The position numbers and the translations under genes are program-made. This document shows, piece after piece, positions 1 through 12,115 of a stretch of DNA of 12,115 nucleotides; the first letter of the stretch is position 1; every line of letters begins with the position of its first letter. This DNA comes from Octopus sinensis (lineage: Eukaryota). A model generated the notes under the pieces. That model worked only from the letters and a program-made list of their open reading frames with translations. It was not told the DNA's origin and made no database searches. The DNA is taken from NCBI RefSeq assembly GCF_006345805.1, contig NW_021826779.1, positions 1-12,115 of the forward strand. Direction: 5' to 3'.

Positions 1-485
1 TACATGTAAGTATGTATGTATGTATGTATATATGTACGTATGTATGGTATGTATGTATGCATGTATACATGTAAGTTGTATGTATGCATGTATGTATGTA
101 TGTATGTGTGTATGTATGTATGTATGTATGTATGCATGTATACATGTAAGTATGTATGTATGTATGTATGTATGTACGTATGTATGTATGTATGTATGCA
201 TGTATACATGTAAGTATGTATGTATGTATGTATGTATGTATGTATGTATGTATGTATGTATGTGTGTGTGTATGTATGTATGTATGTATGTATGTATGTA
301 TGTATGTATGTATGTGTGTTTGTATGTACGTATGTATGTATGCATGTATACATGTAAGTATGTATGTATGTATGTATGTATGTATGTATGTATGCATGCA
401 TGCATGTATGCATGTATGTGTGTGTGTCTGTATGTATGTATGTATGCATGTATACATGTAAGTATGTATGTATGTATGTATGTAT
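1..485 (+). repeat. (TATG)n microsatellite with recurring GCATGTATACATGTAAG interruptions
   Basis: Direct reading: TATG tetramers throughout; palindromic CATGTATACATG at 60-71, 135-146, 199-210, 343-354, 447-458 and a partial copy at 1-10. Confidence 0.97.
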
Positions 486-538
486 GAGCTGAGGTTCGGA
501 CAACATTAACAAGGAACAAAGTGAAGAGGATAGCAGAT

Positions 539-764: not shown

Positions 765-911
765 ATAGTTTAACAACCGCCGAACAGTTAAGCTTTTCTT
801 TCTACTTCCTTGGAAATGAGGTTAATTAGTTATATATTTGGTACATTACAGCTCGCTAATTATTATTCCCGCCCACAAAATCAAAAGGCATTTTTTTCTA
901 AGTGATAGACG

Positions 912-1437
912 CAGGCGTGGCTGTGGGGTAAGAAGCTTGCTTACCAACCACATGGCTCCGGGTTCAGTCTCACTGTGTTGCACCTTGGGCAAATGTCTTC
1001 TAATTTCGCCTTGGACCGACCAAAGCCTTGTGAGTGGATTTGGTAGACGGAAACTGAAAGGCGGCTAGCTGGCAAAACCGTTAGCACGCCGGGGGAAATG
1101 CTGCGCGGTATTTCGTCTGCCGCTACGTTCTGAGTTCAAATTCCACCAAGGTCGACTTTGCCTTTCATCCTTTCCGGATCGATTAAATAAGTACCAGTTA
1201 CGCACTGGGGTCAATATAATTGACTTAATCCGTTTGTCTGTTCTTGTTTGTCCCTTCTGTGTTTAGCCCCTTGTGGGTAGTAAAGAAATAGGTATTTCGT
1301 CTGCCGCTACGTTCTGAGTTCAAATTCTGCCGAGGTCGACTTTGCCTTTCACCCTTTCGTCTGTCCTTGTTTGTCCCCTCTATGTTTAGCCCCTTGTGGG
1401 CAATAAAGAAATAAGACGGAAACTGAAAGAAGCCCGT
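912..1437 (+). mobile_element. tRNA-derived SINE family 1 (head and body), split by a nested insertion at 1061-1413
   Basis: A-box-like TGGCTGTGGGG and B-box-like GGTTCAGTC; 912-1060 plus 1430-1437 align with the intact copy at 11838-11997 (CCAACCACATGG..GGGTTCAGTC..CCTTGGGCAA..GACCAAAG..TTGTGAG..TAGACGGAAACTGAAAGAAGCCCG). Confidence 0.9.
1061..1413 (+). mobile_element. tRNA-derived SINE family 2, one full unit (1061-1290) plus a 5'-truncated, internally deleted second unit (1291-1413)
   Basis: B-box-like GAGTTCAAATTCC; central GTCGACTTTGCCTTTCATCC..AAATAAGTACCAG resembles, from memory, the Meta/MESC SINE core; 3' end TTTAGCCCCTTGTGGG..TAAAGAAATA occurs twice; flanked by the 16-bp direct repeat AGACGGAAACTGAAAG (1045-1060 and 1414-1429). 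Confidence 0.88.
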
Positions 1438-1890: not shown

Positions 1891-2024
1891 CCTATAAATT
1901 AGGGGTTTTAAAACGCCGAAAGGCTATGAGCCCCATTCCCTGACTAAAACAGGAATTAAAGGGATATTTTAGTAAAAAAGAAAAAGAAAATGGTTGAGAA
2001 CTACATTCCTAGATAGTCGCTAGA

Positions 2025-2112
2025 TATGCTAAAAATAGCAGCCAAACTCTTTGAAATCATGCTTTCTGGGAAGAAAAAAAATAAAGAAGGAAAAAAAGAA
2101 AGAATGGGAAGA
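2025..2112 (-). repeat. Orphan satellite-A monomer (reverse orientation) with purine-rich tail
   Basis: ATGCTAAAAATAGCAGCCAAACTCTTTGAAATCA matches the reverse-array core; the following A/G-rich tract resembles that after the monomer at 8699-8790. Confidence 0.75.
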
Positions 2113-2185
2113 GTTTTAATTTTGAAATGCACAATCCGGGTTGACTTCGTTTTTGATGGAGTAAGGCGCGAATTGCAGTTCATTT

Positions 2186-3470
2186 AACTGTTGTTTCCGG
2201 CATATCTATTGACGATATCGTCTGCAAGTTTTAAGACTATAGCTATGTGATTTGTATAAGATTTGGCTGTTGTTTCCAGTCGACAAATTTTAAAACAATA
2301 GCTGTGTGATTCGAGGAAGATTTGACTGTTAGTTTCAGCTTATCTATAGACCCCATCGTATGCAAGTTTTAAGACAATAGCTGTCTTATTTGAGAAAGAT
2401 TTGGCTGTAGTTTCCAGCATATCTATGGACCACATCGTCAACAAATTTTATGACAATATCTGTATGATTCGAAGATTTCGCTGTTGTTTCCAGCATATCT
2501 AGGGATCACATAGAGACTCCTTCCTTACATCGGCAGGAAGTTTTTAAACAGTAGATGCGTGATTTGAAGAATATTTTGCTGCTATTTCTAGCATGGTCTA
2601 CTGAATATGTAGAAGCTAGTCCCATCTTTCCATTTTAAGTCAGTAGATAGTTGAATGAGATTTGACTGCTATTTCTAGCTTAGTCTACTGAGTTCGTCGA
2701 AGCTAGCTTCAGCCATTCTTTTTAACACAATTGAGAGTTGAGAAGGGAAGGGGGTTAGCTGCTATTTCTAGCATGGTCTATTAGAAGCTAACCTCTTAAA
2801 ACAGATATACGTTGAGGGAGATTTGGCTGATATTTCTAGCTCCTTCTACTGTGTACCTCGAAGTAAGCCTCATCTTTTCATCTTAAGACAATAGAGATTT
2901 GAGGGAAATTTGGCTGCTGTTTCTAGCTTGATCTACTGTACGTGTAGAAGCTAGCTTCATCTTTTTGTCTCAAAACTGTTGTAAGTTCAGAGAGATTTGG
3001 GTGCTATTTCTAGCATAGTCTACCGAGTAGGTAGAAGCTAGCCTCGCTTTTCATCTTAAGACAATAGAGATTTGAGGGAAATTTGGCTGCTGTTTCTAGC
3101 TTGATCTACTGTACGTGTAGAAGCTAGCTTCATCTTTTTGTCTCAAAACTGTTGTAAGTTCAGAGAGATTTGGGTGCTATTTCTAGCATAGTCTACCGAG
3201 TAGGTAGAAGCTAGCCTCGCTTTTTCATCTTAAGAAAGTAAAGAGTAGGGAGAGATTTGGCTACTATTTCTAATTTAGTCTACTGAGTACGAGAAGCAGA
3301 CTTCATTTTTTTCCTCGTCTTTAAACGATAGAGACTTGAGAGAAATATTGGCTGCTATTTCTAGCATGGTTGATTGTATATGTAAAGGCTAGCTGCGACC
3401 TTTCGCTCTAAGATTATAGGAAGTTTTAAAGGTCTAGCTGCTATTTCTAACATGTCTATCGACCACGTGG
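2186..3470 (+). repeat. Satellite A, forward arm: 16 units, 60-98 bp spacing (about 78 bp in 2186-2520, about 87 bp in 2585-3444)
   Basis: Core ATTTGAGGGAGATTTGGCTGCTATTTCTAGCAT(G/A)GTCTAC; TTTC anchors at 2194, 2273, 2333, 2411, 2487, 2585, 2672, 2765, 2833, 2920, 3007, 3093, 3180, 3267, 3358, 3444. Confidence 0.95.
2875..3220 (+). repeat. Exact 173-bp tandem duplication of a satellite-A dimer
   Basis: 2875-3047 and 3048-3220 read identical by eye. Confidence 0.95.
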
Positions 3471-3489
3471 TGGCACGCCCTTCTCCGTT

Positions 3490-5705
3490 CCACGTGGTCC
3501 TTAGCAGTCATGCTAGAAATAACTGTTAAATCCCCCTCAAATCACAACTTCTGTTCATCAAGGAACCAGCGAGTAGAGCCCCCGCGTAGTCGGTAATAGT
3601 ACTACTAGTAACAGCAGCCAAATCTCCCTCAAATTATATCACAAAAGGAGTCGGGGAGTAGAGCTTCCACGTGGTCAGTAGACATGCTAGTTATAGCAAC
3701 CAAATCTCCCTCCAATTTTATCCTGCACTGTTTAAAAAGGAGCTAAGGAAAAAGGCTCACACCTGGTTGGTATTCATGCTAGTAATAACAACCAAATCTC
3801 TTTACTGTCTCAAAGCCTTCGAATGGGGCTTACATGAGGACTGAGAAATGCGAGTTATAGTAGCTAAATTTCCCTCAAATGACAGCCTACATTCTCATAA
3901 AGAAGTCTTGGAGTGGGGCCTAATCAAGGACCTAAGACATGCTAATAATAGCAGCCAAATCTCCTTCTTAAAAGGTATCGGAACGTGGCCAGTGGACATG
4001 CTAGTTATAGCAGCTAAATCTTCCTCAGATCATACACTACTATCTCAAAAAGAAGTTTCGGAATTGGGCCTACACGGGGACCCAATACGTGTTAGTAATA
4101 GTAGTCAAATCTCCTTTAAATTACACCTGACTTTCTTAAAAGGAGCCAAGAAGTGAAGTCTTCACATTGTCAGTGGACATGTTAGATATAGCAGCCAAAT
4201 CTCCCTCAAATTACATTAGTTCTTGTTTAAAAATGAACCAGTGAGCGGGGGCTCCACGCAGTCGGTAGACATGCTAGTAATAATAGTCACATCTCAAATT
4301 ACACCCTGCTATCTCAAAAAGTACCCTTACAGTGGACCTTACATGGGGACCTTAGACATACTAGTTATAACAGCTAAATCTCCCTCAAATGATATCCTAC
4401 ACTCTCAAAAAGAGTCAATATGGGGACCCAAGAAATGCTAGTTATAGCAGCCAAATTTCCCTCAAATGATACCCTACACTTTCAAAAAGAAGTCATGGAA
4501 TGGAGCCAACATGGGGACCCAAGAAATGCTAGCTATAGCAGCCAAATCTCCCTCAAATGACGACATACTTCCTTAAAAGGAACCAAGGAGTGAAACCTTT
4601 ATGTGATCAGTGGACATGCTAGTTATAGCAGCGAAATCACTCAGATTACATCATTTCCAGTTTAAGAAGGAACCGGGAGGCCCCACGTGGTCTTACAACA
4701 GCCGGATCGTTTTCAAATTACATTCTTTTGTCTCAAAAAGAAGTATCGTAGTAGGGCCCTACACGTGGTCGGTAAACATCCCGTGATAGCAGTAAAATTT
4801 CCCTCAAATTACATAATTTCTTGTTTAAAAAGGAGCCAAGCAGTGGAGGCTCCACGTGGTCGGTGGACGTATTAGTAATAACAGTCAAATCTTCAAATCA
4901 TACCCTGCTATCTCAAAAAGAAGTCTTGAAGTAGGGCCTATACGAGGTCGGTAGTCATGCTAGTAATAAGAGCCAAATCTCCTTCAGATTACATCCTACT
5001 GTCTGAAACTGAAGTCTCGGACTTGGACCTTCACCAGATTTGTAGTCATGCTAGTCGTAACAGCCAAATCTCCCTCAAATTACATTGTATTACCTTAACA
5101 GGAACCGGGTTGGGAAGCACTGCCAGCACGTGGTCAGTAGACTTGCTAGAAATAACAGTCAACACTCCTTTAATTTACACGCTGCTGTCCCAAAAAGAAG
5201 CCTCGGAGTGATACCTAGACGTGGAGCGTAGATACACTAATAATAGTAGTCAGATCTCCCTCAGATTATACGCTACAATTTTAAAAGGAGCCAGGAAAAA
5301 GAGCTTACATGTGGTCGTTAGACATCCTAGAAATAACAGCCGAATCTCCCTCAAATTGCATTCTACTGACTCAGAAAGAGGTTTCAGAATGGGCCCTGCA
5401 CGTGGCTGGTAGATATGCAAGAAATAACAGCCAGATCTCCCATAAATAACACCCTATTGTCAAAACCGTCTTAGGGGATTTGCCCGGGGGCCATTTTTGT
5501 GTAGGGGCCCAATTTTGATTCATGTATACTGGGGCTTGCTATCCTTATATAACTACGAAGGGTCCAGTGCAGAGGTTTGTTAAGGGGCCTAGAATGTTGC
5601 TACGGCGGCTTTGGCGAATGTCTTAAAAGGAATGATCGTAGACAGTTCCTTACGTAGACACAGGACATGCTAGAAACAGCAACCAAATCTCGTTAAAATT
5701 AAACA
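3490..5705 (-). repeat. Satellite A, reverse arm: 24 units, modal period 90-92 bp
   Basis: Core GTAGACATGCTAGTAATAGCAGCCAAATCTCCCTCAAATTAC (reverse complement of the forward core); anchors at 3513, 3605, 3687, 3779, 3851, 3942, 4001, 4092, 4182, 4274, 4361, 4438, 4529, 4619, ~4692, ~4781, 4872, 4960, 5051, 5146, 5237, 5327, 5418, 5670. Confidence 0.95.
5461..5613. mobile_element. Possible MITE-like insertion in the last spacer of satellite A
   Basis: Anchor spacing 5418-5670 is 252 bp, about 160 more than one period; the insert has degenerate terminal inverted repeats (CAAAACCGTCTTAGG vs GCTACGGCGGCTTTG, 11/15) and internal GGGGCC motifs. No clean TSD. Confidence 0.4.
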
Positions 5706-6290
5706 ATACAGTCCTAAAAGAAGAATGTGAGACGTGACCTGTAGAGTGTCGATATATATATGTGTGTATATATGTGTGTGTGTTAAATAAAATGAGACAA
5801 TTAAAGCCAAGGCAGAGTGAAATTTCTAGGATATTAGCTTATACACGCTCATATACACGGAACCCGAGTTAGACTCCTCACTCATACTAGTATCGAACCG
5901 GGAGTCTATCTGCAGCACCTACATAGCCTTACTTGCGTTTTGGAGTCTACGGATACCAAACCTTCTCATATTATATATATATATATTAAGTAGAGAAAAA
6001 ACACTATATTATAAAACATATAACTAAATCACAAAAAGTACAAAAATGAATATATATAAGTAAAAAGACTACGTACGTTTCGTGGCTATAACTTCAATTC
6101 GAATTACAATTAAATTTTAATTTAATCGAAAAACAACCCAATTTAAAATATGGCGTATGTCTATCATTGTTTGAATTACGTATTAGTGGTTTTTCCTCTA
6201 ATTTATATATATTATATATTTATATTTTGAAATTTGATTTAATACTAAATTGAATTTTCCCCTGTAAGTTTGGAGTTATACTCCCTAATA

Positions 6291-6427: not shown

Positions 6428-6556
6428 AACGCCCTTCTTTTTGTTTCCGTCGACCAAATTCACTCACAGGATTTTTCGACCAAGTGTTGCGTTGTGGGAC
6501 TGAACCCGGAACCATGAGGTTTGGAAGCAAACTTCTAACTACACAACCACACCTGT
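6428..6556 (-). mobile_element. SINE family 1, reverse orientation, diverged with internal deletion
   Basis: TTTCCGTCGACCAAATTCACTCACAGG..GTGGGACTGAACCCGGAACCATG..CAACCACACCTG is a reverse-complement match; about 30 bp of the body is missing. Confidence 0.85.
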
Positions 6557-6610
6557 GGCGAAACTCTCGGACCTTGAGTCACTCTCTGCTGCTTCTGCTA
6601 AATATTAATA

Positions 6611-7335: not shown

Positions 7336-7395
7336 GTCTCTCTTATCTGTCTCTGTCTGTCTGTCTGCCTGTCTGTCTGTCTATCTATCTATCTG

Positions 7396-7456
<61 letters not shown>

Positions 7457-7557
7457 TTATCTATCTGTCTGTCTGTCTGTCTCTCTCTGTCTCTCTCTCT
7501 GTCTCTCTCTGTCTCTGTCTCTCTCTCTCTCTCTGTCTATATCTATCTCTATCTATC

Positions 7558-7592
<35 letters not shown>

Positions 7593-7669
7593 CCATATAT
7601 ATACATACACATTTAGATAGATATAGAATAGATAGAGACAGAGAGAGAGAGAGACAGATAGATAGATAG

Positions 7670-7737
<68 letters not shown>

Positions 7738-7855: not shown

Positions 7856-7878
7856 TTTTAGTTAACGAAGAAACCTTT

Positions 7879-7960
7879 ACGTGGTTCCTCGATCTGCTAA
7901 AAATAACAGCTAAATCATTTTTATAATCACATCCTACCATCTATAAAAAAAAGAAGGGGC
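7879..7960 (-). repeat. Orphan satellite-A monomer heading B sub-array 1
   Basis: ACGTGGTTCCTCGATCTGCTAAAAATAACAGCTAAATC..ATAATCACATCCTACCATCTATAAAAAAAAGAAG follows the reverse-arm unit layout. Confidence 0.65.
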
Positions 7961-7980
7961 ATTGAAGGGCACATTGGAAA

Positions 7981-8503
7981 TTACATTCCTAGATACATAA
8001 TGCCTGAACACAAGAAAGTATAGCCTCAGCTGGAGCATCTTTGCCCTAACCTGAACAGTAAGAACAACTATAGCCACTAATACAAAGAACTATATGATAC
8101 ATTCGCTAATGTAATCCTAGATAGACTATGTCACGTTAAAATGTAGGATAGTCAGAGGTCTACAGGTTCTGGATTGACCTGGGGCTAAAAAACAACAAAA
8201 AAAGCGACTAATACTAACTGTTATACAATACATTAGGAAATGTAGTCTTAGATATACTATGACCGAATAAAAGGCGGGATGGTCACGGTTGGACCGTCTT
8301 TGATCATAGGTATGCTGGATCAAGACTGACCTGGGGCTAAAAAACAACAAAAAAAGCTACTAATACTAACTGCTATACAATACATTAGGAAATGTAGTCT
8401 TAGATACACTATGACCGAATAAAAGGCGGGATGGTCACGGCTGGGCCGTCTTTGATCATAGGTCTGCCGGATCAAGACTGACCTAGGGTTAAAAACACAA
8501 CAG
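7981..8503 (+). repeat. Satellite B sub-array 1 (4 units)
   Basis: TC(C/T)TAGATA anchors at 7987, 8115, 8246, 8398; 8176-8327 and 8328-8479 are a 152-bp duplication with 7 mismatches. Confidence 0.92.
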
Positions 8504-8634
8504 CGATGACGACAATAGCTTCAAGAAGAAAAGAGATGAAATCTCACCTATGTAGCTCCTTATTCGAGTCACCTTGTATACCTATCAGGCAACGACCTAC
8601 CCGCTCCCTCCACGCCTCCCCAACCTGAAATTCT

Positions 8635-8675
8635 GCGCCGCCATCGCTGCCCCGATTGCGTAGCGACGGCGGCGT
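8635..8675. other. GC-rich hairpin between the two B sub-arrays
   Basis: GCGCCGCCATCGCT (8635-8648) / AGCGACGGCGGCGT (8662-8675): 12 Watson-Crick pairs, one A.C mismatch and one G.T; on the minus strand a continuous 13-bp stem with one G.U. Confidence 0.75.
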
Positions 8676-8698
8676 GCAGGCGAGATTGCCGTCCTGCT

Positions 8699-8790
8699 AT
8701 GCAAGAAATAGCAGCCAAATCTCCTTGGAATCACAAACTACGGAAAAATATATAAAAGAAAGAACAAAAGAAATGAAGGAAGAAAGGAGG
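8699..8790 (-). repeat. Orphan satellite-A monomer plus purine-rich linker heading B sub-array 2
   Basis: ATGCAAGAAATAGCAGCCAAATCTCC 8699-8724 is a near-perfect A core. Confidence 0.85.
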
Positions 8791-8800
8791 CGAGAACATT

Positions 8801-10230
8801 CCACTAATGTACTCCTAGATACATTCTTCCTATACCAATGACAGGATGGTCATGCTTGGAGCAACTTTGACAATAGTTTTGTTCTTTAAAAACTGGTCTA
8901 AGACAACTATAGCCACTAATACTGTACTGTACATTCTGCAATGTACTCCTAGATATACTATGTCTGAATAAAAGGCGGGTGAGTCACAACTGGAACATCT
9001 TTGATCATAGACTTGCTGGGTAAGGCCTGGCCTAGGGCTAAACAACAACAGCTATAATCACTAATACTAACTACTATACTGTACATTAGATGATGTAGTC
9101 CAAGATACATTACGTCTGAATATATGTCAAGACAGTCCTGGCTGGAACGTCTTTGATCATAGGTCTACTGGATCAGGACTACCTGGTGTTAAACAGCTAC
9201 ATGCTTCAGTACTAAGTGGTATTCGTTAGATAATGTAGTCCTAAAATCATTATGTCAGAATATTCAACGCGATGGTCACGGCGGGAACATCTTTGAAGAT
9301 GTTCCCGCCGTGATCAAGACTAACCAGGGGCTAAAAAGCAACTACAGCGTCCTAATACTAACTACTATGCTGTACATTGGATAATGTAGTCCTAGATACA
9401 CTATGCAGAATAAAAGACAGGGTGGTCACAGCTGGAACATCTTTGATCATAGGTCTACTGGATCACGACTGACCTGGGGCTAAACAACAACTATATGGAC
9501 AGATACAAAGTACTGTACATTAAACAATGTAGTCCTAGATACACTATGCCCGAATAAAAGAGATGGTCACAAATGGAACATCTTTGATCATAGGTCTACT
9601 GGCTCAGCAACTTAGTCACTAATACTAACTACTATACTATACTTTAGAAAATATAGTCCAAGATACACTGTGTCTGAATAAAAGAGGAGATGGTCACAAA
9701 TGGAACATCTTTGATCGTGGGTCTACTGGATCGGGATTGACCTGGTGTTAAGCGCCAATGATATGCTCTAATACAAAGCACTACTTATTAGATCATGTCG
9801 TCCAAGATACACTATGCCTCAATAAAAGGCGGGATGGTCGCAAGTGGAACATCTTTGATCATACGTCTGCGAGATCAAGACTGGCCTAGGGCTTAACAAC
9901 AACAACAACAGCTATGGCCCCTATTACTAACTTCTACACTACACATTATGATGTAGTCCTTGATACACAATGCCTGGCTTAAAAGGCTGTGGTGTGATCA
10001 CTACTGGTCTGAGGATCAAGTCTGGCCTAGGGTTAAACAACAACAGCAGCAACAACAACAACAACAACAACAACAACAGCTATGGCCCCTATTACTAACT
10101 TCTACACTACACATTATGATGTAGTCCTTGATACCCAATGCCTGGCTAAAAGGCTGTGGTGTGGTCACTACTGGTCTGAGGATCAAGTCTGGCCTAGGGT
10201 TAAACAACAACAACAACAACAACAACAACG
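8801..10230 (+). repeat. Satellite B sub-array 2 (10 units, 124-168 bp)
   Basis: Consensus ATGTAGTCCTAGATACACTATGCCTGAATAAAAGGCGGGATGGTCACAGCTGGAACATCTTTGATCATAGGTCTACTGGATCAAGACTGACCTGGGGCTAAA(CAA)nCAGCTATAGCCACTAATACTAACTACTATACTGTACATTAGATA; anchors 8813, 8947, 9099, 9239, 9390, 9533, 9657, 9801, 9957, 10125. Confidence 0.95.
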
Positions 10231-10318
10231 ATATGTAACAACAACAGCAGCATACGTAACAGAGAGCCACCGTTAGCAAGAGTGTACGCGCCGCCGTCGT
10301 CGCCTCTGGCAAACTTAC

Positions 10319-10424: not shown

Positions 10425-10620
10425 AAGAGGGCTGGGCCGCGGCGGCGCGGCGGCGAGGCGGAGAAGGAGGGATGGAGAGAGATAGAGAGGAAGAGAGAGA
10501 GAGAGAGAGGATGCAGCGGCGGCGGGAAGTTGAAGAAACAGAGAGAAATAAGGGGGGGGTGGAGAGAGAGAGGTCGGAAGCTGGTTGGCGGGTTTAGAGA
10601 AGGGTTTTTTTTTTTCTTTA
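10425..10620. promoter_or_regulatory. CpG/GGC-rich and (GA)n purine tract; possible 5'UTR or promoter-proximal region of a minus-strand gene
   Basis: GGCGGCGCGGCGGCGAGGCGG, (GA)n and G-runs in an otherwise AT-rich window. Confidence 0.35.
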
Positions 10621-10669
10621 TCTGAGCGGTTTTGCAGCGGTATTTTTGTGTAGTATCGTTTGCTGTTGG

Positions 10670-11653
10670 CGGTGATGATGATGCTGACGATGACAATGGT
10701 GGTGGTGGTGGTAGTGGTGGTGGTGGTGGTGGTGGTGGTGGTGGTGGAGGAGGAGATGGTAACTATGATAATGGTGATGATGATGATGATGACGATGACA
10801 ATGGTGGTGGTGGTGGTGGTGCTGGTGCTGGTGGAGGAGATGGTGACTATGATAATGGTGATGATGATGATGATGATGGTGATAGTGATGATGATGAGGG
10901 TAGAGGTGTGTCTTCTGGCTGCTGATCTTGGCGAGGAGATGGTGGAGGGTGCCGGCGGTAGTACTTATGGTAATAACGAAGGTGATGATGATGATGGTGG
11001 TGGCGATGGTGGTGGTGATGGTGGTGGTGGTGGTGGTGATGGAATTACTGCTGAGACTAACGATAGTGTTGATGACGATGATGATGGTGATGATAGTGGT
11101 GGTGGTGGTGGTGGTGGTGGTGATAAGGATGGTGCTAATAATAATGGTGGTGGTGGTGGTAGTGATAGCGGCAGTGACGACGGGGAAGAAGATGAAGGCG
11201 AGGAGTGTTGGCAGAATTTCGGAGGTATTGAGGCGGGGTATTGGGTGGGGGGAAGTTATGAACGAGGGTGGGGGTGTAAATACTTTTGAGGAAAGTGTTA
11301 GGGAAGGGCGATGCCGACGACGACGACGACGATGATAATGAGGAGAGGATGAGAAGGAGGGGAAGAGAAAAAGGATGACGTCGGTGATGATGATGACGAT
11401 GATGATGATGATGATGATGATGCCAATGACGATGATGATGGTGGTGGTGAAGACATCGACGGTGTTGATAATGTCGAGGAAGGCGGAAAGGAGGAGAAGG
11501 AGAAAGATGAGGGTGGTGGTGGCGACGGTGTCGGCGTGAAGGGTTGGAGTCGATTGTATAATTATGGAAGTCGTGGGTTGGCGGTCTTTGCAGTGACTGC
11601 AGCCGTGAACTCTTATCACCATCATCACCATCGTCATCTTTCTTAATCGTCAG

Positions 11654-11691
<38 letters not shown>

Positions 11692-11692
11692 G

Positions 11693-11752
<60 letters not shown>

Positions 11753-11760
11753 TGTCATCA
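10670..11760. repeat. Compound trinucleotide low-complexity region (GGT/GAT/GAC then CAT/CAC)
   Basis: Direct reading; near-pure (CAT)n at about 11654-11750; duplicated module at 10686-10790 and 10791-10876. Confidence 0.93.
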
Positions 11761-11837
11761 ACGTAGGTCTTGGGGAAGATTTGGCGGGACACAGAATGTG
11801 ACAAGGCTTATATGTTTGTGTGTGTGTGTGTATAGGT

Positions 11838-12115
11838 GTAGGAGTGGTTGTGTAGAAAGTAGCTTGCTTACCAACCACATGGTTCCGGGTTCAGTCCCAC
11901 TGCGTGGTGCCTTGGGCAAGTGTCTTCTACTATAGCCTTAGGCCGACCAAAGACTTGTGAGGGGATTTGATAGACGGAAACTGAAAGAAGCCCGTCGTAT
12001 TTATGTATATGTATGTGTGTATATGTTTGTGTGTCTGTTTTATCCCCCCATCATCGCTTGACAACCGATGCTGGTATGTTTACGTAACCGTAACTTAGCG
12101 GTTCGGCAAAAGAGA
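11838..12115 (+). mobile_element. SINE family 1, longest copy, running off the window end
   Basis: Head with GGTTCAGTCCC B-box-like motif, body matching 912-1060, internal TA/TG microsatellite 11998-12040, then a 3' domain CATCGCTTGACAACCGATGCTGG..TAACTTAGCGGTTCGGCAAAAGAGA. Confidence 0.92.

What the first reader, a model, noticed from the sequence alone, without database searches (positions are those of the whole stretch)
2186..5705. 3.5-kb inverted satellite: two opposed arrays of one ~90-bp repeat joined at a self-complementary CCACGTGG
Seen: 16 forward units and 24 reverse-complement units share a ~45-bp core; the junction is GACCACGTGG (3461-3470), 19 nt, CCACGTGGTC (3490-3499), and CCACGTGG is itself a palindrome. 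The arms differ in spacer and period (about 87 vs 91 bp), so they have evolved separately since the inversion. Inference: the self-complementary 8-mer seeded a fold-back event; as RNA (for example inside an intron) the arms could pair core-to-core in many registers, giving a long imperfect dsRNA. Established: coleoid cephalopods have extensive ADAR A-to-I editing, which acts on such duplexes. I do not recognise this repeat family.
Basis: partly seen in the sequence, partly recalled or inferred. Interest (0 to 1): 0.8.

Follow-up and report, generated by a model that had tools for sequence, protein, structure and literature searches.

The report
Old inverted tandem-repeat array, octopus-like DNA
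A 3.5-kb stretch is made of about 40 decayed copies of one ~90-bp repeat, 16 pointing one way and 24 the other; it is real, but looks like an ordinary old rearranged repeat array, with no evidence that it does anything.

Summary
There are 16 forward units (median period 87 bp) and 24 reverse units (median 90.5 bp). They meet at GACCACGTGG (3461-3470), a 19-nt spacer, then CCACGTGGTC (3490-3499). The array is old and decayed. Whole-unit identity is about 0.6 within arms and 0.52 between arms, and only a ~26-45-nt core is well kept.

The arms are not mirror images. I found no terminal domains and no target-site duplication. CCACGTGG belongs to the unit itself: it is intact in 5 of 40 units, including both junction units (p about 0.013 if random).

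The junction has the formal signature of a fold-back inversion, a short inverted repeat around a single-copy spacer. Any such event must be ancient and has since been overwritten by turnover within each arm.

As RNA the region would fold into a long imperfect hairpin (z about -11.7, 730 inter-arm pairs). No helix exceeds 18 bp, and no stretch reaches 95% identity over 40 bp. That makes it a mediocre ADAR substrate. Transcription and editing could not be tested.

No database or paper available here identified the repeat family. The window holds two further orientation switches, so such events look routine in this DNA. Interest is low.

The parts
2156..3470 (+). Forward arm: 16 units (F01-F16), median period 87 bp. 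Sub-blocks are F01-05 at 2156-2546 (76-79-bp type), F06-15 at 2547-3405 (87-bp type) and F16 at 3406-3470 (reverse-arm-like, ends in GACCACGTGG).
   Evidence: Anchor scan, unit alignment, TRF periods 79/87/173, periods.
2882..3228 (+). Recent duplication of a two-unit block (F10-F11 = F12-F13), 173 of 174 positions identical.
   Evidence: TRF period 173 over 2811-3272 at 90% matches; pairwise identity matrix; 173/174 identity.
3461..3470 (+). Left half of the junction inverted repeat, GACCACGTGG. It is the end of unit F16 and contains the self-complementary CCACGTGG.
   Evidence: Direct reading; motif positions; 10-bp stem in the ssDNA fold, -16.4 kcal/mol, z -3.6.
3471..3489 (.). 19-nt single-copy spacer, TGGCACGCCCTTCTCCGTT. 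Only its first 5 nt continue a unit-like sequence (compare unit R20).
   Evidence: Inverted pair I12, 3438-3475 with 5121-5158. The spacer alone has no significant match to any unit: score 12 against shuffle 15.2 +/- 2.4.
3490..3499 (+). Right half of the junction inverted repeat, CCACGTGGTC. Unit R01 starts exactly at the palindrome.
3490..5714 (-). Reverse arm: 24 units (R01-R24), median period 90.5 bp. R15 and R16 are degenerate. TTTC-loop variants occur only at the edges (R01, R20, R22-24).
5463..5619 (.). Stretch without the core, between R23 and R24 (anchor spacing 252 bp). It is either an insertion or decayed units.
2016..2112 (-). Solo copy of the unit core plus a purine-rich tail, in reverse-arm orientation, just left of the forward arm. 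It is 74% identical to the solo at 8698-8783 over 90 nt.
7874..7946 (-). Solo copy of the unit, followed by an array of a second repeat family of ~150 bp (family B).
8699..8783 (-). Solo copy of the unit core plus a purine-rich tail, followed by a second family-B array.

Best explanation
This is an old, decaying tandem array of an unclassified ~87-91-bp repeat. The same repeat also occurs as solo copies nearby, in a repeat-dense region that looks like octopus DNA. The array contains one head-to-head orientation switch.

The switch was made by a DNA rearrangement at or next to the unit's own palindromic CCACGTGG motif. It was either fold-back priming or template switching after a break, or one breakpoint of an inversion. 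This step is inferred, not shown.

Afterwards each arm turned over on its own through unequal exchange, amplification of arm-specific variants and point decay biased from GC to AT. That erased any mirror symmetry (the lack of symmetry is shown).

Nothing indicates a function. If one transcript ran through both arms it would fold into a long but imperfect hairpin, with core-to-core helices of about 10-18 bp separated by loops. Such RNA would behave like a weak inverted-SINE pair for dsRNA-binding enzymes such as ADAR (fold computed, biology untested).
For: - Units and orientation.
- Strong divergence everywhere. Whole-unit identity is F-F 0.58, R-R 0.62, F-R 0.52. Jukes-Cantor distance to each block's own consensus is 0.18-0.31. 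On the octopus calibration quoted in PMC13282606 (0.09 = 25 My, 0.2 = 56 My) that means tens of millions of years.
- The substitution spectrum is GC-to-AT biased and strand-symmetric. In the reverse arm A>G is 0.088 and T>C is 0.096; CpG observed/expected is 0.54-0.64. This is what neutral decay predicts.
- No mirror register. No outer-end correspondence. No target-site duplication.
- Junction signature: a 10-bp inverted repeat around a 19-nt spacer. This matches fold-back junctions described in PMC3907307 and PMC10622511.
- Intact 10-mer in 5 of 40 units, including both junction units.
- Ongoing local turnover: the 173/174-bp dimer duplication.
- The same 12-kb window holds two more orientation switches. 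One is a 21-nt snap-back inside a family-B unit. The other is a mirrored microsatellite palindrome with 108-nt arms at 90% complementarity. Such events appear routine here.
- Fold.
Against: - The core is kept about twice as well as the rest of the unit (0.157 against 0.313 mismatches; heterogeneity p about 5e-25). Pure neutral decay does not predict this. It could reflect a binding site, gene conversion, or partly misalignment of the flanks.
- The link between the intact palindrome and the junction is only modestly significant (p about 0.013).
- The spacer's origin is unexplained.
- Transcription, copy number elsewhere, and the state of the orthologous locus could not be examined. 'No function' is therefore a default, not a result.
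Confidence: 0.6

Rival explanations
1. It is the relic of a foldback-type (FB-, Galileo- or Tetris-like) DNA transposon. Its two long terminal inverted repeats are built of tandem repeats, and the conserved core of each unit served as a transposase-binding site. The middle domain is reduced to 19 nt.
For: It has long inverted arms of unequal length made of tandem repeats with almost no loop. A core is conserved about twofold better than the rest of the unit. In Galileo, tandem repeats inside the arms carry extra transposase-binding sites, and in Tetris such repeats seeded satellite arrays (PMC4079207). Solo copies of the unit are dispersed in the window.
Against: The outer ends share no terminal domain. 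There is no direct repeat of 8 nt or more at the flanks, and 7-mers are at chance level, 4 against 3.2 expected. The arms are not alike in mirrored order. Copy number elsewhere is unknown.
Confidence: 0.15
2. It is a functional hairpin-RNA locus. Both arms are transcribed together, and the duplex is used as an ADAR substrate or sponge, or as a source of siRNAs or piRNAs.
For: Predicted folding is strong: z -11.3 for 2981-3980 and z about -11.7 for 2156-5714, with 730 inter-arm pairs. Octopus shows the highest hyper-editing signal among 21 species, and that signal is tied to neighbouring inverted repeats (PMC5625713). The locus meets that paper's lenient criterion of 65% identity or more: 898 of 1325 forward-arm bases are covered.
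Against: It fails the strict criterion for long, nearly perfect dsRNA: no stretch of 40 bp or more at 95% identity or more. The longest uninterrupted helices are 17-18 bp. There is no sign that arm complementarity is maintained, since between-arm identity (0.52) is lower than within-arm identity. There is no evidence of a promoter or of transcription. The mirrored microsatellite in the same window is a far better duplex.
Confidence: 0.1
3. It is an assembly artefact: two separate arrays of the same family were mis-joined head to head at the shared palindromic motif.
For: The junction lies in repeated sequence, and the motif on either side is identical and self-complementary. No reads were available to test it.
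Against: The arms are very different from each other. That excludes the usual perfect-palindrome chimeras (missed adapter, amplification fold-back). Units are diverged enough (about 0.5-0.6 identity) to be assembled uniquely. A unique 19-nt spacer sits at the join.
Confidence: 0.05
4. It is a periodic array of protein-binding sites acting as a cis-regulatory or chromatin element. The sites would be the CACGTG E-box and the core mini-palindrome TGCTA-N4-TAGCA.
For: CACGTG occurs 8 times in the array against 1.75 expected in the whole window. The core is conserved. The core holds a 5-bp/4-nt/5-bp palindrome with 88.7% of cells paired.
Against: Most units have lost the E-box (32 of 40). Pairing in the mini-palindrome is no better than in column shuffles: 87.4% mean, with 67 of 500 shuffles as high. 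There are no binding or chromatin data.
Confidence: 0.03

Closest known systems
Fold-back inversions / inverted duplications with a spacer (Hermetz et al. 2014, PMC3907307; Al-Zain et al. 2023, PMC10622511)
   Same: A short inverted repeat bounds a short single-copy spacer at the point where orientation flips. Here it is 10 bp around 19 nt. Published junctions show 2-8 bp of inverted microhomology in human, and 5-11-bp repeats with 6-35-bp spacers in yeast.
   Different: Fresh fold-back products are mirror images outward from the spacer. Here mirror pairs are no more alike than any other pairs. The event, if it happened, is ancient and has been overwritten.
Foldback transposons (Drosophila FB, Galileo, Tetris; PMC4079207)
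   Same: Long inverted arms of unequal length built from tandem repeats, a small or absent middle domain, and repeats that can seed satellite-like arrays.
   Different: No shared terminal domain, no target-site duplication, no second copy available, and arms that are only about 52% identical.
Neighbouring inverted SINE/Alu-type repeats as ADAR hyper-editing substrates (Porath et al. 2017, PMC5625713)
   Same: Reverse-oriented copies of one repeat lie within 2 kb and can pair within a single transcript. Octopus is the species with the strongest hyper-editing signal.
   Different: These are tandem arrays rather than two elements. Complementarity is lower (66-74% over 112-219 bp; best 30-31 bp at 90-93%). 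Transcription and editing are untested.
Transposon-carried satellite-like arrays of molluscs (oyster Cg_HINE / Pearl Helentron derivatives, PMC7492417)
   Same: Short dispersed arrays and single monomers. The window also shows a composite layout: module, then purine-rich or microsatellite tail, then central tandem repeats. It appears twice (solo unit, tail, family-B array), once followed by a GC-rich hairpin.
   Different: No subterminal inverted repeats or conserved right flank were found. The two candidate right flanks are not similar (score 28 against shuffle 22 +/- 3.4). The resemblance is one of layout only.
Drosophila hairpin-RNA (hpRNA) loci made of inverted tandem repeats (from my own knowledge: Okamura et al. 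2008; Czech et al. 2008)
   Same: Inverted tandem repeats that can form a long intramolecular RNA hairpin.
   Different: hpRNA stems are long and nearly perfect and yield 21-nt siRNAs. Here no helix exceeds 18 bp, and there are no small-RNA data.

Membership tests
Tandem-repeat (satellite-like) array | Head-to-tail copies with a regular period | tested here: met
   16 + 24 units; median periods 87 and 90.5 bp.
Tandem-repeat (satellite-like) array | Homogenised monomers (typically 80-90% identity or more), as in classical satellite DNA | tested here: not met
   Whole-unit identity is 0.58 (forward) and 0.62 (reverse); the best sub-blocks reach 0.72-0.77. This is a decayed array, not a homogenised satellite.
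Tandem-repeat (satellite-like) array | High copy number or other arrays elsewhere in the genome | not testable with these tools
   No eukaryotic genome collection is available. There are only 3 solos in the window. One chance hit in metagenomes.
Fold-back inversion junction | Short inverted (micro)homology bounding a single-copy spacer | tested here: met
   GACCACGTGG / 19 nt / CCACGTGGTC; ssDNA hairpin of -16.4 kcal/mol, z -3.6.
Fold-back inversion junction | Arms are mirror-image copies outward from the spacer | tested here: not met
   Mirror register 0.536 against 0.509-0.528 for shifted registers. With free end gaps, 0.754 against 0.751.
Foldback (FB-like) transposon | Long inverted arms containing tandem repeats | tested here: met
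Foldback (FB-like) transposon | Shared non-repeat terminal domain at both outer ends | tested here: not met
   The outer flanks align only through unit cores. Outer units are no more alike than inner ones. Flank extensions are not significant.
Foldback (FB-like) transposon | Target-site duplication (7-10 bp) | tested here: not met
   No shared word of 8 nt or more between 2050-2190 and 5690-5800. 7-mers: 4 against 3.2 expected. Age could have erased one.
Foldback (FB-like) transposon | Several genomic copies with the same structure | not testable with these tools
   No host genome is available.
ADAR hyper-editing substrate (operational criteria of PMC5625713) | Reverse-oriented similar sequence within 2 kb at 65% identity or more | tested here: met
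   58 HSPs of 40 bp or more at 65% or more; 898 of 1325 forward-arm bases covered.
ADAR hyper-editing substrate (operational criteria of PMC5625713) | Long, nearly perfect duplex (over 95% identity across 40 bp or more) | tested here: not met
   None found. The best are 30-31 bp at 90-93%. The longest uninterrupted helices in the MFE fold are 17-18 bp.
ADAR hyper-editing substrate (operational criteria of PMC5625713) | Both arms transcribed in one RNA, with clustered A-to-G mismatches | not testable with these tools
   No RNA data. The genomic substitution spectrum shows no A>G strand excess, but that does not bear on RNA editing.
Helentron/HINE-type element carrying tandem repeats | Left flank with subterminal and inverted repeat plus microsatellite, central repeats, right flank with palindrome | tested here: inconclusive
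   The layout 'solo unit + purine-rich tail + family-B array' occurs twice. One GC-rich hairpin lies at 8635-8675, -18.2 kcal/mol as DNA, but the two right flanks are not similar.
tRNA-derived SINE present in the same window | Sequence similarity of the unit to the SINE | tested here: not met
   Best local scores are within the shuffle range (z 1.9 or less).
Any Rfam RNA family / tRNA | Covariance-model or ARAGORN match inside 2156-5714 | tested here: not met
   Only one sub-threshold chance hit (ceN108, 24.5 bits against gathering score 50). No tRNA.

The most novel reading that the evidence does not exclude
The two opposed arrays are a maintained hairpin-RNA locus or a foldback-type mobile element of octopods. 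In that reading the conserved ~26-45-nt core and the CACGTG palindrome are working sites (protein binding or duplex nucleation). The locus would feed the unusually active dsRNA-editing or small-RNA machinery of cephalopods.
Probability: 0.08. Interest if true: 0.55.

Novelty: new member of a known kind. Interest (0 to 1): 0.2.

Why it matters
Taken at face value this adds one more decayed, rearranged repeat array to a genome type that is about two-thirds repeats (PMC13282606). It has modest value as a worked example. A palindromic motif inside a repeat unit sits exactly at an orientation switch, which fits fold-back or template-switch rearrangement. Three such switches of very different sizes occur within 12 kb.

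It would matter more if genome-wide data showed that this family is habitually arranged as opposed arrays, or that such loci are transcribed and hyper-edited. Octopus is reported to have an exceptional load of dsRNA-forming loci. Tandem arrays with orientation switches could then be one structural source of that load.

Tried and rejected
- Protein route to other loci. The array ORF 3848-4156 and a SINE-containing ORF 838-1068 gave no homologues. Three window ORFs had no exact record.
- Exhaustive HMMER search of 1.84 billion representative proteins. It returned only three weak hits (E 1e-7 to 1e-5). On inspection they are unrelated repetitive proteins, so I rejected them.
- Core pattern scan of metagenome contigs. 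It gave one hit whose flanks do not resemble the unit, so it is chance.
- Literature. I found no cephalopod satellite survey. Unit and SINE k-mers matched only unrelated primers or nothing.
- My by-eye impression that the unit derives from the tRNA-like head of the SINE. Shuffle statistics rejected it.
- My by-eye readings that the 19-nt spacer, a partial unit left of F01, and a partial unit right of R24 are unit-derived. None is significant.
- Mirror symmetry from the junction outward, and correspondence of the outer ends. Neither was found.
- Target-site duplication. None was found.
- Covariation in the core mini-hairpin TGCTA-N4-TAGCA. It was not significant.
- A genomic footprint of A-to-G editing in the substitution spectrum. 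None was found.
- Similarity of the two candidate right flanks of a Helentron-like composite. It was not significant.
Full report

Yes. An 18-nt anchor from the unit core (GGCTGCTATTTCTAGCAT) finds 16 units on the + strand (cores starting 2186-3436). On the - strand it finds 22 clear units (cores ending 3527-5684) plus two degenerate ones (4706, 4797), making 24. At up to 4 mismatches there are 33 hits in the window against 0.17 in shuffled sequence. TRF independently reports periods of 79, 87 and 173 bp in the forward arm. Median anchor spacing is 87 bp in the forward arm and 90.5 bp in the reverse arm.

The junction reads GACCACGTGG (3461-3470), then TGGCACGCCCTTCTCCGTT (19 nt), then CCACGTGGTC (3490-3499). 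Composition skews flip sign across the junction, as expected.

**2. Anatomy of the unit**

A MAFFT alignment of all 40 units shows that the unit can be aligned over its whole length between arms. Only a core is well kept: roughly TTTGAGGGAGATTTGGCTGCTAT..CTAGCATG. In the reverse arm the mismatch rate to consensus is 0.157 in the 26-nt core and 0.313 elsewhere (heterogeneity chi-square p about 5e-25). Part of that contrast may come from alignment noise in the flanks.

Whole-unit identity is 0.58 within the forward arm, 0.62 within the reverse arm and 0.52 between arms.

**3. Anatomy of the arms**

The forward arm is a mosaic of three types:
- F01-05 are 76-79-bp units ending in GACCACATCG.
- F06-15 are 87-bp units with a derived GTAGAAGCTAGC segment.
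- F16 is a reverse-arm-like unit ending in GACCACGTGG.

In the reverse arm the TTTC version of the core loop is found only at the edges (R01, R20, R22-24). The interior carries TTAC or TAAC.

One block of two units was duplicated very recently: 2882-3054 against 3055-3228, 173 of 174 positions identical. The stretch 5463-5619 lacks the core.

**4. How old is it, and how does it evolve?**

Jukes-Cantor distances of units to their own block consensus are 0.18 (F01-05), 0.23 (F06-15) and 0.31 (reverse arm). The calibration quoted for octopus repeats is 0.09 = 25 My and 0.2 = 56 My (PMC13282606). On that scale the array is tens of millions of years old. This assumes neutrality and that the window is octopod.

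The substitution spectrum is GC-to-AT biased and strand-symmetric. In the reverse arm, G>A is 0.188 and C>T is 0.181; A>G is 0.088 and T>C is 0.096. CpG observed/expected is 0.54-0.64. This is the pattern of neutral decay. There is no A-to-G strand excess in the DNA.

**5. The junction and the fold-back idea**

CCACGTGG occurs five times in the window, all inside the array (3463, 3490, 3667, 4683, 4852; 0.07 expected). CACGTG occurs eight times. The palindrome is therefore a unit motif that most units have lost.

Both units flanking the junction are among the 5 of 40 that keep the intact 10-mer. That has a probability of about 0.013 if junction units were drawn at random. It is a modest but real association.

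The layout, a short inverted repeat around a single-copy spacer, is the published signature of fold-back inversions. Human junctions show 2-8 bp of inverted microhomology. Yeast junctions use 5-11-bp repeats with 6-35-bp spacers (PMC3907307, PMC10622511). As ssDNA the junction forms a hairpin of -16.4 kcal/mol (z -3.6).

A fold-back product starts as a perfect mirror image, and this one is not:
- Mirror pairs F(16-k)/R(1+k) average 0.536 identity. Shifted registers give 0.509-0.528 and non-mirror orderings give 0.497-0.527.
- The outer ends do not correspond either.
- The spacer has no significant match to any unit. Only its first 5 nt continue a unit-like sequence.

An equally simple alternative is an inversion with a breakpoint next to the motif. 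A reverse-oriented solo copy sits just left of the forward arm (2016-2112). However, it resembles the other solos (74% to 8698-8783, including a purine-rich tail) more than it resembles array units.

I conclude that the rearrangement mechanism cannot be decided from this sequence. A fold-back at the palindrome is compatible with the data and mildly favoured, but it would be ancient.

**6. Transposon test**

Foldback transposons (FB, Galileo, Tetris) have long inverted arms made of tandem repeats. In Galileo those repeats carry transposase-binding sites (PMC4079207). That would explain a conserved core.

The defining ends are missing here, though. There is no shared terminal domain and no direct repeat of 8 nt or more at the flanks. 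No second copy can be looked for with these tools.

The unit is not related to the SINE copies in the window. Rfam and tRNA scans found nothing in the array.

**7. Would it make dsRNA?**

As RNA, 2981-3980 folds at -331.4 kcal/mol against -263.3 +/- 6.1 for shuffles (z -11.3). The whole 2156-5714 folds at -1123.7 against -937 +/- 16 (z about -11.7), and against -886.9 when the forward arm is flipped into direct orientation. There are 730 inter-arm base pairs in 132 helices, and the longest helices are 17-18 bp.

Pairing is possible in many registers: 237 reverse-oriented HSPs.

Measured against the criteria used for hyper-editing substrates (PMC5625713), the locus meets the lenient one (65% identity or more; 898 of 1325 forward-arm bases). 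It fails the strict one (over 95% across 40 bp or more). The best segments are 30-31 bp at 90-93%. The longest are 112-219 bp at 66-74%.

The same paper reports that octopus has the strongest hyper-editing signal of 21 species, tied to neighbouring inverted repeats. Nothing shows that it is transcribed.

**8. Context**

The window is dense with repeats:
- Four copies of a ~160-bp SINE-like element (898-1060, 1739-1902, 6494-6557, 11831-12014). I recognise these from memory as the abundant octopus tRNA-derived SINE. No tool confirmed that.
- A second tandem family, B, of ~150 bp at 7971-10248.
- Many microsatellites.

Two further orientation switches occur in the same 12 kb:
- A 21-nt snap-back that replaced part of one B unit (9273-9316).
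- A mirrored microsatellite palindrome: (TCTA/TCTC)n, (TA)n, (GAGA/TAGA)n, with 108-nt arms at 90% complementarity (7352-7737).

Orientation switches therefore look like a routine mutational outcome in this DNA.

**9. External evidence**

No collection available here holds cephalopod genomes.
- Protein-space detours failed.
- One metagenome hit was chance.
- Literature searches found no description of this family and no cephalopod satellite survey.

Whether the family is already in Dfam, Repbase or the O. vulgaris library (Zenodo) remains open.

**10. Verdict**

The best reading is an old, decaying, probably transposon-derived tandem array with one ancient orientation switch at the unit's palindromic motif, and no demonstrated function (confidence 0.6). 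It is a new member of a known kind, and interest is low (0.2).

The most novel reading still open is a maintained hairpin-RNA locus or a foldback-type element. I give it a probability of about 0.08.

Noticed in passing
window 7352-7737: Mirrored microsatellite palindrome: (TCTG/TCTA/TCTC)n, then (TA)n, then (GAGA/TAGA)n. The arms are 108 nt at 90% complementarity in several registers. It is a much better potential hairpin than the finding itself, and it explains the sub-threshold miRNA-model hits on both strands at 7525-7649.
   Followed up: partly
window 9273-9316: One unit of the ~150-bp family B has its normal TCATAGGTCTACTG replaced by the reverse complement of the preceding 15-21 nt. The arms are 21 nt at 95% complementarity with a 2-nt loop. 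This is a small templated snap-back event.
   Followed up: yes
window 7971-10248 (and reverse copy 1482-1575): A second tandem family (B): units of about 141-168 bp, about 15 copies, 67-80% alike, with 291-bp and 152-bp higher-order periods. The last two units are 94% alike and are flanked by (AAC)n.
   Followed up: partly
window 7874-8698 and 8699-10300: A composite layout is repeated twice: a solo copy of the 90-bp unit, a purine-rich tail, then a family-B array. The first is followed by a GC-rich hairpin at 8635-8675 (-18.2 kcal/mol as DNA). This recalls the layout of mollusc Helentron-derived elements (PMC7492417), but the two right flanks are not similar.
   Followed up: partly
window 898-1060, 1739-1902, 6494-6557, 11831-12014: Four copies (two per strand) of a ~160-bp SINE-like element, 76-87% alike. 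I recognise it from memory as the abundant octopus tRNA-derived SINE. ARAGORN calls no tRNA, and neither a protein search nor a literature k-mer search confirmed the identity.
   Followed up: partly
window 2180-5690 (unit cores): The conserved core contains a mini-palindrome, TGCTA-N4-TAGCA, with a variable loop (TTTC, TTAC, TAAC and others). F01-05 carry a double change (TGTTG...CAGCA) that keeps pairing. Overall, pairing and covariation are not better than column shuffles.
   Followed up: yes
window 10620-11760: About 1.1 kb of low-complexity trinucleotide sequence, (TGG)n/(TGA)n/(GAT)n then (ATC)n, with very strong GC skew (up to 0.75). It gives long but compositionally trivial ORFs on both strands. 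No exact protein record exists for the 339-aa ORF.
   Followed up: partly
window 1107-1413: A local tandem duplication of about 185 bp: 1107-1174 matches 1291-1358 at 94%, and 1230-1290 matches 1353-1413 at 89%. It lies next to a SINE copy.
   Followed up: no
window 4-486 and 487-560: A 483-bp (ATGT)n array. It is followed by a short open frame reading ...EDSRSRWRAKIATDGQY, which by eye resembles the C-terminal end of a LINE reverse-transcriptase ORF. That resemblance is from memory and was not tested.
   Followed up: no
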